From Lama guanicoe (lineage: Eukaryota), in the NCBI GenBank assembly GCA_013239625.1, contig MU053379.1, forward strand, positions 4,421,229-4,485,228: a stretch of 64,000 nt of DNA. Reading direction: 5' to 3'. Position numbers and translations under genes: made by a program. Shown piece by piece: positions 6,441 through 7,606 of this stretch. How positions within the stretch are numbered: position 1 is the first letter of the stretch; every line of letters starts with the position of its first letter. The notes beneath the pieces are model-generated. The model was not told the DNA's origin. It searched no databases and saw only the letters and a program-made list of their open reading frames with translations.

Positions 6441-7358
6441 TCACGACTTCGGGAAGCGGGCAGATGAGTTCAAGGTGCAGAGAGACCACTCCCGGGGCTC
6501 TGAGACGTGAGTGTCCCCGGAGTCCCTGGAGGGCTGGTCCCCACCCTCCATGTTTCTGATTCAGCAGGTCGAGTATTCGAATTTCTGCCAGGTGACACGA
6601 GGCTGCTGGCCCCGAACTTGGAGAAACACGACTCAGGGGCAGACGCCCGAGATGCTGTGTTGCCCGATTGCTGATCACACCCCCTGCAAATAAGGGGGAA
6701 AAGCCTGGACGAGGAGCGGTGGGAAGCCACCAGGCTCACCTCTGAAAGTCACCTCCAGCTGGCCTCAGGCATCCTGACCCCTCCCCAGCCACCCAGCCTA
6801 GGAGACCACCACCCACAGCCACCCTGCCCGATTTTCCAGGGCAGAGCCCACTTCACGAATTCGGCCGCTCCCTGCACCGACAGCCGGGAGAGCTAGGGCT
6901 GGGGGCTGCCTGGTGGGTGCCCAGCCCGGGACGGTCCAGCCTGGGGTGTAAAACCACACTCTCTGGAGCTGGGGTGGACAAGGAGGCCCAGTCGGGAACC
7001 CTGGCCCCTCCTGACCCCCCTCCCCAGGCACATTTCAGAGGCCCTGGTGGGTGAAGAGCCGCCTCCGAGGACAGCAGGGTGAGTGGCAGAGGTTTCCGGG
7101 TGTCTGGGTCTAGTGCTCGCCGCCGGTGTCCGCGAGGCCCCCGCACGGAGCACCTGGGTCAGAGGCTGGCCTTCTCCTGTGGCATCTCTGCCCCGAGTAT
7201 CCGTCTTCCGCCTCAAGCTCAGTCTCACCGAAATCTAACTGAAAGGGAGGGGGAGGGGGGTGGCTCGGGCTGCGGGGAGGGGCGCCGGGGCCGGGCAGAC
7301 CTGGAGCTGCCCACGATGCCACAGGAGACTCGGGTTCCATTCGTCACGAAGAGAGTTT

Positions 7359-7606
7359 CACGCCAGCAGCTGTGCCAACCCCAGCCTCCACGGCTGCCTC
7401 TCCGACAACGCCCGCCTGTCGTCCCAGGGTTTTCTGCCTGCGCTGCTCGCTTCTGGAGGCCGCAGTGGCGCAGAGGGTCACCGCCCTCGAGAGCAGAGGA
7501 GGGATGGGAGGCGTCTGCCCCCCAGCCCGGTTCCCCTGCCGGCGGAGCCCAGGCACCCAGAACCCAGCCGCTGCAGGTCCCCCTCACCAGGACCACCACC
7601 TTCTGA
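7359..7606 (+). pseudogene. SSTR4: SSTR4 (somatostatin receptor 4) remnant: TM7, helix 8 and C-terminal tail only, multiply frameshifted
   Basis: Peptides spread over three frames ([30 protein letters not shown]...[35 protein letters not shown]-stop) match the human SSTR4 C-terminus YANSCANPILYGFLSDNF...RVLCLRCCLLEGA...TALKSKGGAGCMCPP...[17 protein letters not shown]. Position and orientation are syntenic (+ strand, tail-to-tail with THBD). Confidence 0.92.

What the first reader, a model, noticed from the sequence alone, without database searches (positions are those of the whole stretch)
7080..7606. SSTR4 appears lost: only a frameshifted TM7 and C-tail survive at the syntenic position
In human, intronless SSTR4 lies tail-to-tail just downstream of THBD. 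Here homology begins abruptly at 7359. NPxxY has become NPSLH, the EEPLDYY segment is deleted, and at least three frameshifts scatter the tail over all three frames, though the terminal [8 protein letters not shown]-stop is still recognisable. I find no start codon region, TM1-TM6 or DRY motif in the 7.3 kb upstream, implying a deletion of most of the CDS followed by decay. This would be a unitary pseudogene of the somatostatin/cortistatin receptor linked to analgesic and anti-inflammatory signalling, which automated annotation would probably miss.
Basis: partly seen in the sequence, partly recalled or inferred. Interest (0 to 1): 0.8.

Follow-up and report, generated by a model that had tools for sequence, protein, structure and literature searches.

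The report
SSTR4 pseudogene remnant in a camelid
Next to the thrombomodulin gene, this alpaca/llama-type genome keeps only the broken last ~80 codons of somatostatin receptor 4; the receptor is lost, but a 2024 paper already reports this loss for even-toed ungulates.

Summary
On the + strand, 7359-7606 carries the end of a somatostatin receptor gene. It has a TM7 segment ([19 protein letters not shown]) that hits only somatostatin receptors in the PDB. It ends in [9 protein letters not shown]-stop, which matches the published human SST4 C-terminus. The piece is split over three reading frames by three frame changes, and NPxxY reads NPSLH. THBD (17974-19713, minus) and a CD93-like gene (36470-38398, minus) follow, as in the mouse order Sstr4-Thbd-Cd93. 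THBD is 99% identical to alpaca THBD, so the window comes from a South American camelid.

No trace of TM1-TM6 or DRY turned up by Pfam scans, PDB searches or a motif scan of the window. An independent short-read contig reproduces 6964-9000 with no base change or listed indel inside the remnant.

The reading as a pseudogene at the ancestral locus is well supported. It is not new: PMC11367936 (BMC Biol 2024) reports no SSTR4 ORF in even-toed ungulates, cetaceans, horses, bats, pangolins and dog-like carnivorans.

Three things stay untested:
- Absence of an intact copy elsewhere in the genome.
- Whether the breakpoint is shared with other artiodactyls.
- The "EEPLDYY deletion".

The parts
7359..7425 (+). 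SSTR4 remnant, piece 1: end of TM7 and start of helix 8 ([23 protein letters not shown]). NPxxY has degraded to NPSLH at 7377-7391.
   Evidence: PDB hits are only somatostatin receptors, and the alignments start at 7359. Motif score 68 against a shuffle maximum of 43.
7426..7545 (+). SSTR4 remnant, piece 2: proximal C-tail in another frame ([40 protein letters not shown]). It is reached through a frame change at about 7425/7426.
   Evidence: Direct reading. Resemblance to the SSTR4 tail rests on my memory of the human sequence, except for the final C of CQQ. There is no significant database hit on its own.
7545..7571 (+). SSTR4 remnant, piece 3: distal tail (EPRHPEPSR), back in the TM7 frame. 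It aligns to human EALQPEPGR.
   Evidence: Frameshift-aware alignment to the published human SST4 366-388 peptide.
7574..7606 (+). SSTR4 remnant, piece 4: C-terminus [10 protein letters not shown] plus stop (7604-7606), in the third frame.
   Evidence: The last 8 residues and the stop are identical to human SST4 (PMC8657703). Score 47 against a shuffle maximum of 28 over the whole window.
7079..7358 (+). Not part of the gene remnant. This is the upstream part of an accidental GC-rich ORF (7079..7606) that set the finding's start coordinate.
   Evidence: ORF list. No SSTR hit in any frame here.
17974..19713 (-). THBD (thrombomodulin), intact and intronless, 579 aa. It lies tail-to-tail with the remnant, with the two stop codons 10.4 kb apart.
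   Evidence: 99% identity to Vicugna pacos THBD; Pfam THBD, EGF_Tme5, Lectin_C.
36470..38398 (-). CD93-like gene: C-type lectin, five EGF domains and a TM segment. It is named from its architecture and its position next to THBD.
   Evidence: Mouse order Sstr4-Thbd-Cd93. The name is inferred and was not confirmed by a homology search.

Best explanation
Window 7359-7606 (+) is the decayed 3' end of the somatostatin receptor 4 gene, at its ancestral place beside THBD and CD93, in a South American camelid genome. Only about 80 codons survive, from mid-TM7 to the stop. They cannot encode a receptor, for three reasons. Everything from the start codon to TM6, including the ligand pocket, DRY and the G-protein interface, is absent. 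The NPxxY switch reads NPSLH. The rest is broken by three frame changes.

Shown: the remnant, its lesions, the synteny, and its reproduction in an independent assembly.

Inferred:
- The 5' ~900 bp of the single-exon CDS were removed by deletion, or replaced, at or just before 7359.
- The remainder then drifted neutrally.
- The animal has no SST4 signalling, so somatostatin and cortistatin act through the other four receptors.

This is the camelid instance of the loss already published for even-toed ungulates.
For: - TM7 piece: PDB hits are exclusively somatostatin receptors.
- C-terminus: [9 protein letters not shown]-stop matches the published human SST4 366-388 peptide.
- Neighbours: THBD and a CD93-like gene follow in the expected order and orientation.
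- Upstream: no 7TM signal in 1-8100 on either strand, none in the nearest upstream pieces, and none in a whole-window motif scan.
- Independent contig: a 2914-nt contig of run X2 covers 6964-9000 with 3 substitutions (7248, 7250, 8600). It has no listed indel, and depth is flat over 7082-8335.
- Other runs: 15 DNA runs from 7 studies and 5 organism labels hold 81% or more of the sampled 31-mers of 5600-9000.
- Literature: no SSTR4 ORF in even-toed ungulates (PMC11367936).
Against: - No full SSTR4 reference could be obtained.
- Pfam does not see even the 29-aa TM7 piece, so remnants of that size could be missed.
- The middle tail piece has no statistical support of its own.
- The rest of the genome was not searched.
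- Only one of the four runs laid gave a contig over the remnant, and that run may not be independent of the assembly's sample.
- The 2024 paper's species tables were not readable, so the inclusion of camelids is inferred from the phrase 'even-toed ungulates'.
Confidence: 0.9

Rival explanations
1. Assembly artefact: the gene is intact in the animal, and the truncation and frameshifts are errors of this assembly.
For: The region is 67-70% G+C, which is a typical trouble spot. Three of the four runs laid gave no contig over the remnant.
Against: A Logan contig of run X2 matches 6964-9000 with only 3 substitutions, none of them in 7359-7606, and no listed indel. Many runs from several studies hold most 31-mers of the stretch. 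A published survey found no SSTR4 ORF in even-toed ungulates.
Confidence: 0.03
2. The 5' part of the gene is not deleted. It has either diverged beyond detection in place, or it has been separated by an insertion or rearrangement and lies beyond the window start (more than 7.36 kb upstream).
For: No SSTR4 reference was available for a sensitive tblastn or DNA alignment. Pfam misses short remnants. The window ends 7.36 kb upstream of the remnant.
Against: The surviving tail is still easy to recognise, so equally old TM1-TM6 codons should be too, yet none is seen. No transposon-type domains were found in 1-8100, and 1-9000 shares no repeat with the rest of the window. Either way the gene is dead.
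Confidence: 0.12
3. An intact SSTR4 copy exists elsewhere in the genome (a duplicate or a translocated copy), so the receptor is not lost.
Against: SSTR4 is single-copy at this locus in human, mouse and other tetrapods. The 2024 survey reports no ORF in even-toed ungulates. The scan's notes on this genome mention no other SSTR4-like gene, which is only weak support.
Confidence: 0.03
4. The piece derives from another somatostatin receptor paralog, or is a chance similarity.
For: TM7 alone scores slightly better against SSTR5 and SSTR1 than against the (apparently truncated) SSTR4 chain in the PDB.
Against: The C-terminal [8 protein letters not shown]-stop belongs to the human SST4 tail and is far above chance here. 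The locus is the SSTR4 locus.
Confidence: 0.02

Closest known systems
SSTR4 loss across mammals, reported in 'Alterations of pleiotropic neuropeptide-receptor gene couples in Cetacea' (BMC Biol 2024, PMC11367936)
   Same: Same gene, same kind of event and same order of mammals. [quoted passage not shown] 104 species had a PseudoIndex above 2.
   Different: The main text does not describe the camelid locus. Its supplementary tables (S22, S23) were not readable here, so I cannot say whether it records the lesion anatomy seen here: only TM7 and the tail survive, with three frame changes and NPSLH.
SSTR4 missing from the dog genome (PMC2651185, 2009; Table 1 of PMC3560075, 2012)
   Same: Loss of the same receptor in another laurasiatherian lineage, while SSTR1, 2, 3 and 5 are kept.
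   Different: A different order (Carnivora). It was reported as 'missing', without a described remnant.
Loss of SSTR4 in ray-finned fishes (PMC3560075)
   Same: It shows that SSTR4 is dispensable in whole vertebrate clades.
   Different: This is an ancient loss with no remnant. Those lineages keep SSTR6, which tetrapods lack.

Membership tests
SSTR4 ortholog (somatostatin receptor type 4 gene) | Somatostatin-receptor TM7 signature (YANSCANPxLYGFLSDNF) | tested here: met
   [19 protein letters not shown] at 7359-7415. PDB hits are only SSTR1/2/4/5. Motif score 68 against a shuffle maximum of 43. The signature is degraded at Y->H, N->S, I/V->S, Y->H, F->C and F->A.
SSTR4 ortholog (somatostatin receptor type 4 gene) | Subtype-specific C-terminal tail ending ...[8 protein letters not shown]-stop | tested here: met
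   VPLTRTTTF plus stop at 7577-7606. Compared with human SST4 366-388 as printed in PMC8657703.
SSTR4 ortholog (somatostatin receptor type 4 gene) | Conserved locus: next to THBD and CD93, tail-to-tail with THBD | tested here: met
   THBD at 17974-19713 (-) and a CD93-like gene at 36470-38398 (-). Mouse clone with Sstr4 and Thbd, and the Thbd-Cd93 intergenic region.
Functional class A GPCR | Uninterrupted ORF of about 385 aa with TM1-TM7, DRY and NPxxY | tested here: not met
   No such ORF in the window. No 7tm_1 signal. No TM1-TM6 motifs. NPSLH in place of NPxxY, and three frame changes.
Unitary pseudogene | Disabling lesions are real and not assembly errors | tested here: met
   An independent contig of run X2 is identical over 7359-7606. 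That is one run only, and its independence from the assembly's sample is not certain.
Unitary pseudogene | No functional copy elsewhere in the genome | not testable with these tools
The literature states there is no ORF in even-toed ungulates.

The most novel reading that the evidence does not exclude
The camelid lesion may be an event of its own, not shared with pigs, ruminants and whales. The lesion is a breakpoint inside TM7 at 7358/7359 together with these three frame changes. If it is lineage-specific, SSTR4 was inactivated several times independently within Artiodactyla after a long period of relaxed constraint. The still well-preserved TM7 and PDZ-ligand end would then point to a fairly late loss in the camelid line.
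Probability: 0.15. Interest if true: 0.3.

Novelty: already known. Interest (0 to 1): 0.15.

Why it matters
SST4 is studied as an analgesic and anti-inflammatory drug target. Knowing which domestic animals lack it matters for choosing animal models and for interpreting somatostatin and cortistatin pharmacology in camelids. The loss itself is already in the literature for even-toed ungulates. What this window adds is a base-level description of the camelid remnant, which is useful for annotation and for dating the loss once other artiodactyl loci are aligned.

Tried and rejected
Attempts to obtain an SSTR4 reference sequence by tool all failed.
- The word search with the 271-aa frame-0 piece, region 55-112, found no scoring candidate.
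- The big representative search with 7426-7566 returned four unrelated repeat proteins.
- A PDB search with the frame-0 tail gave only chance hits.
- A PDB search with the frame-1 piece gave only a low-complexity protocadherin match.
- Paper searches for two tail peptides found nothing.
So no orthologous loci from other species could be fetched, and the breakpoint could not be dated.

Other checks that led nowhere:
- The exact THBD and CD93 proteins are not in the protein collection.
- A metagenome scan for the NPSLH-bearing 24-mer found nothing. A second scan with a degenerate SSTR pattern was not run, to avoid fetching human contigs.
- Tandem repeats, Rfam and a self-BLAST of 1-9000 found nothing.
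- The first motif script timed out.

The frame-corrected, joined read-through of the remnant was not searched as one protein. Its pieces were searched apart.

Rejected readings: assembly artefact, another SSTR paralog, and chance similarity (see the rival explanations).

Full report
**What is there**

The window has no N and is G+C-rich around the finding, at 67-70%. I name + strand frames by (start-1)%3.

Reading 7345-7612 in all three frames gives four pieces:
- Frame 2, 7359-7425: [23 protein letters not shown].
- Frame 0, 7426-7545: [40 protein letters not shown].
- Frame 2 again, 7545-7571: EPRHPEPSR.
- Frame 1, 7574-7603: [10 protein letters not shown], followed by the stop at 7604-7606.

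NPSLH stands at 7377-7391 where class A receptors have NPxxY. The finding's start coordinate (7080) is only the start of an accidental 175-codon ORF in frame 1 (7079..7606). Homology starts at 7359.

**Is it more than chance, and is it SSTR4?**

The TM7 piece is clearly from a somatostatin receptor.
- The 29-residue piece (7353-7439) gave 19 PDB hits at E up to 10. All were somatostatin receptors (SSTR5, 1, 4, 2), with best E 0.005.
- The whole 187-residue stop-free piece (7239-7799) gave 15 hits, all SSTR5 or SSTR2, with best E 0.0006. Every alignment begins at query residue 41, which is base 7359.

TM7 does not separate the subtypes. The tail and the locus do.
- The human SST4 C-terminus, residues 366-388, is printed in PMC8657703 as [23 protein letters not shown] (also PMC6957562).
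- A frameshift-aware alignment of that peptide to 7500-7612 places E-P-x-x-P-E-P-x-R in frame 2. After a frame change it places VPLTRTTTF directly before the stop.
- In a BLOSUM62 scan of all six frames of the full 64 kb, the TM7 motif scores 68 at 7359 (locally shuffled sequence: mean maximum 28, highest 43). [10 protein letters not shown]-stop scores 47 at 7574 (shuffles: mean 24, highest 28).

The middle piece (frame 0) resembles the SSTR4 proximal tail as I remember it. It has no statistical support of its own:
- The PDB search gave only chance hits.
- The word search found nothing.
- The 1.8-billion-protein search returned four unrelated repeat proteins.

**Locus and organism**

- THBD is intact on the minus strand at 17974-19713. 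It has 579 aa and the Pfam THBD, EGF_Tme5 and Lectin_C domains.
- It is 99% identical to Vicugna pacos thrombomodulin and 76% or less to non-camelid mammals. The window is therefore from an alpaca/llama-type camelid.
- A C-type-lectin/EGF gene with CD93 architecture lies at 36470-38398 on the minus strand.
- The mouse order is Sstr4-Thbd-Cd93 (PMC4910986), and SSTR4 is single-exon (PMC3560075).
- The remnant thus sits where SSTR4 should be, tail-to-tail with THBD, with the two stop codons 10.4 kb apart.

**What is missing**

- The window has no ORF of 220 codons or more besides THBD, the CD93-like gene and GC-rich artefacts.
- All stop-free pieces of 25 codons or more in 1-8100 were scanned one by one against Pfam: 101 on the + strand and 97 on the - strand. 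None hit 7tm_1 at E up to 1, and none hit a transposon domain.
- Pfam does not detect the 29-residue TM7 piece either. This test therefore excludes sizeable remnants, not tiny ones.
- PDB phmmer does detect the TM7 piece. It found no somatostatin receptor in 7055-7603, 7083-7235, 7114-7239, 7243-7425, 6897-7079, 6746-7051 or 6675-6893. These cover all three + frames of 7114-7358 and the larger pieces further upstream.
- Five short family motifs (TM1/ICL1, TM2, DRY, TM5, TM6) were typed from my memory of SSTR1/4. None scored above shuffled sequence anywhere in the window on either strand.
- 1-9000 shares no repeat with the rest of the window.

The simplest reading is that the 5' ~900 bp of the CDS were deleted or replaced up to 7358. 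It is not formally excluded that they lie beyond the window start.

**Is it an assembly slip?**

- 15 DNA runs from 7 studies and 5 organism labels hold 81-95% of the sampled 31-mers of 5600-9000.
- Four runs were laid on 5600-9000. Only run X2 gave a contig over the remnant. It is 2914 nt long and covers 6964-9000.
- That contig has three substitutions (7248, 7250, 8600) and no listed indel. Depth is flat from 7082 to 8335.
- The one counted gap falls in the bin 8336-8449, beside a skipped low-complexity stretch.
- The other three runs gave no usable contig, and the tool warns that such holes prove nothing.
- The lesions are therefore reproduced once in short-read data. Independence from the assembly's own sample is not guaranteed.

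**Comparison with what is known**

- PMC11367936 (BMC Biol 2024) surveyed 202 mammalian genomes. It states that 104 species have an SSTR4 PseudoIndex above 2. [quoted passage not shown]
- Dog SSTR4 was reported missing in 2009 and 2012.
- Ray-finned fishes lost SSTR4 early.
- The camelid loss is therefore an instance of a published pattern. The paper's species tables were not held, so camelid coverage is inferred from the phrase "even-toed ungulates".

No orthologous loci could be fetched, and the breakpoint and frameshifts could not be dated.
- No SSTR4 reference protein could be obtained by reference.
- The joined, frame-corrected read-through was not searched as one sequence. Its pieces were searched apart.
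- No human contig was fetched or compared. The only human letters used are the 23-residue epitope printed in a paper.
- One metagenome scan for the NPSLH-bearing 24-mer found nothing.

**Verdict**

Confidence is about 0.9 that this is the dead remnant of SSTR4 at its ancestral locus. It is already known at the level of the order, and interest is low.

Noticed in passing
window:58599-59457: The scan's notes list an NBN (NBS1) retrocopy here, on this same window. I did not examine it.
   Followed up: no
window:17697-19521 and 36298-38593: Very long ORFs (482-724 codons) run in other frames and antisense over the THBD and CD93-like coding regions. They look like by-products of the very high G+C content of these single-exon genes, not genes.
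   Followed up: no
window:5600-9000: Five runs labelled or guessed as RNA hold 5-11% of the sampled words of this stretch (X16-X20). Some part near the remnant may be transcribed, or may simply be present as DNA.
   Followed up: no
window:17974-19713: This exact THBD protein is absent from the 15-billion-protein collection, and the nearest hit is alpaca THBD at 99%. The window therefore comes from another individual or another Lama/Vicugna species than the annotated alpaca.
   Followed up: partly
window:1-9000: No part of 1-9000 matches the rest of the 64-kb window at E<1e-5. This is an unusually repeat-poor, G+C-rich stretch for a mammalian intergenic region.
   Followed up: no
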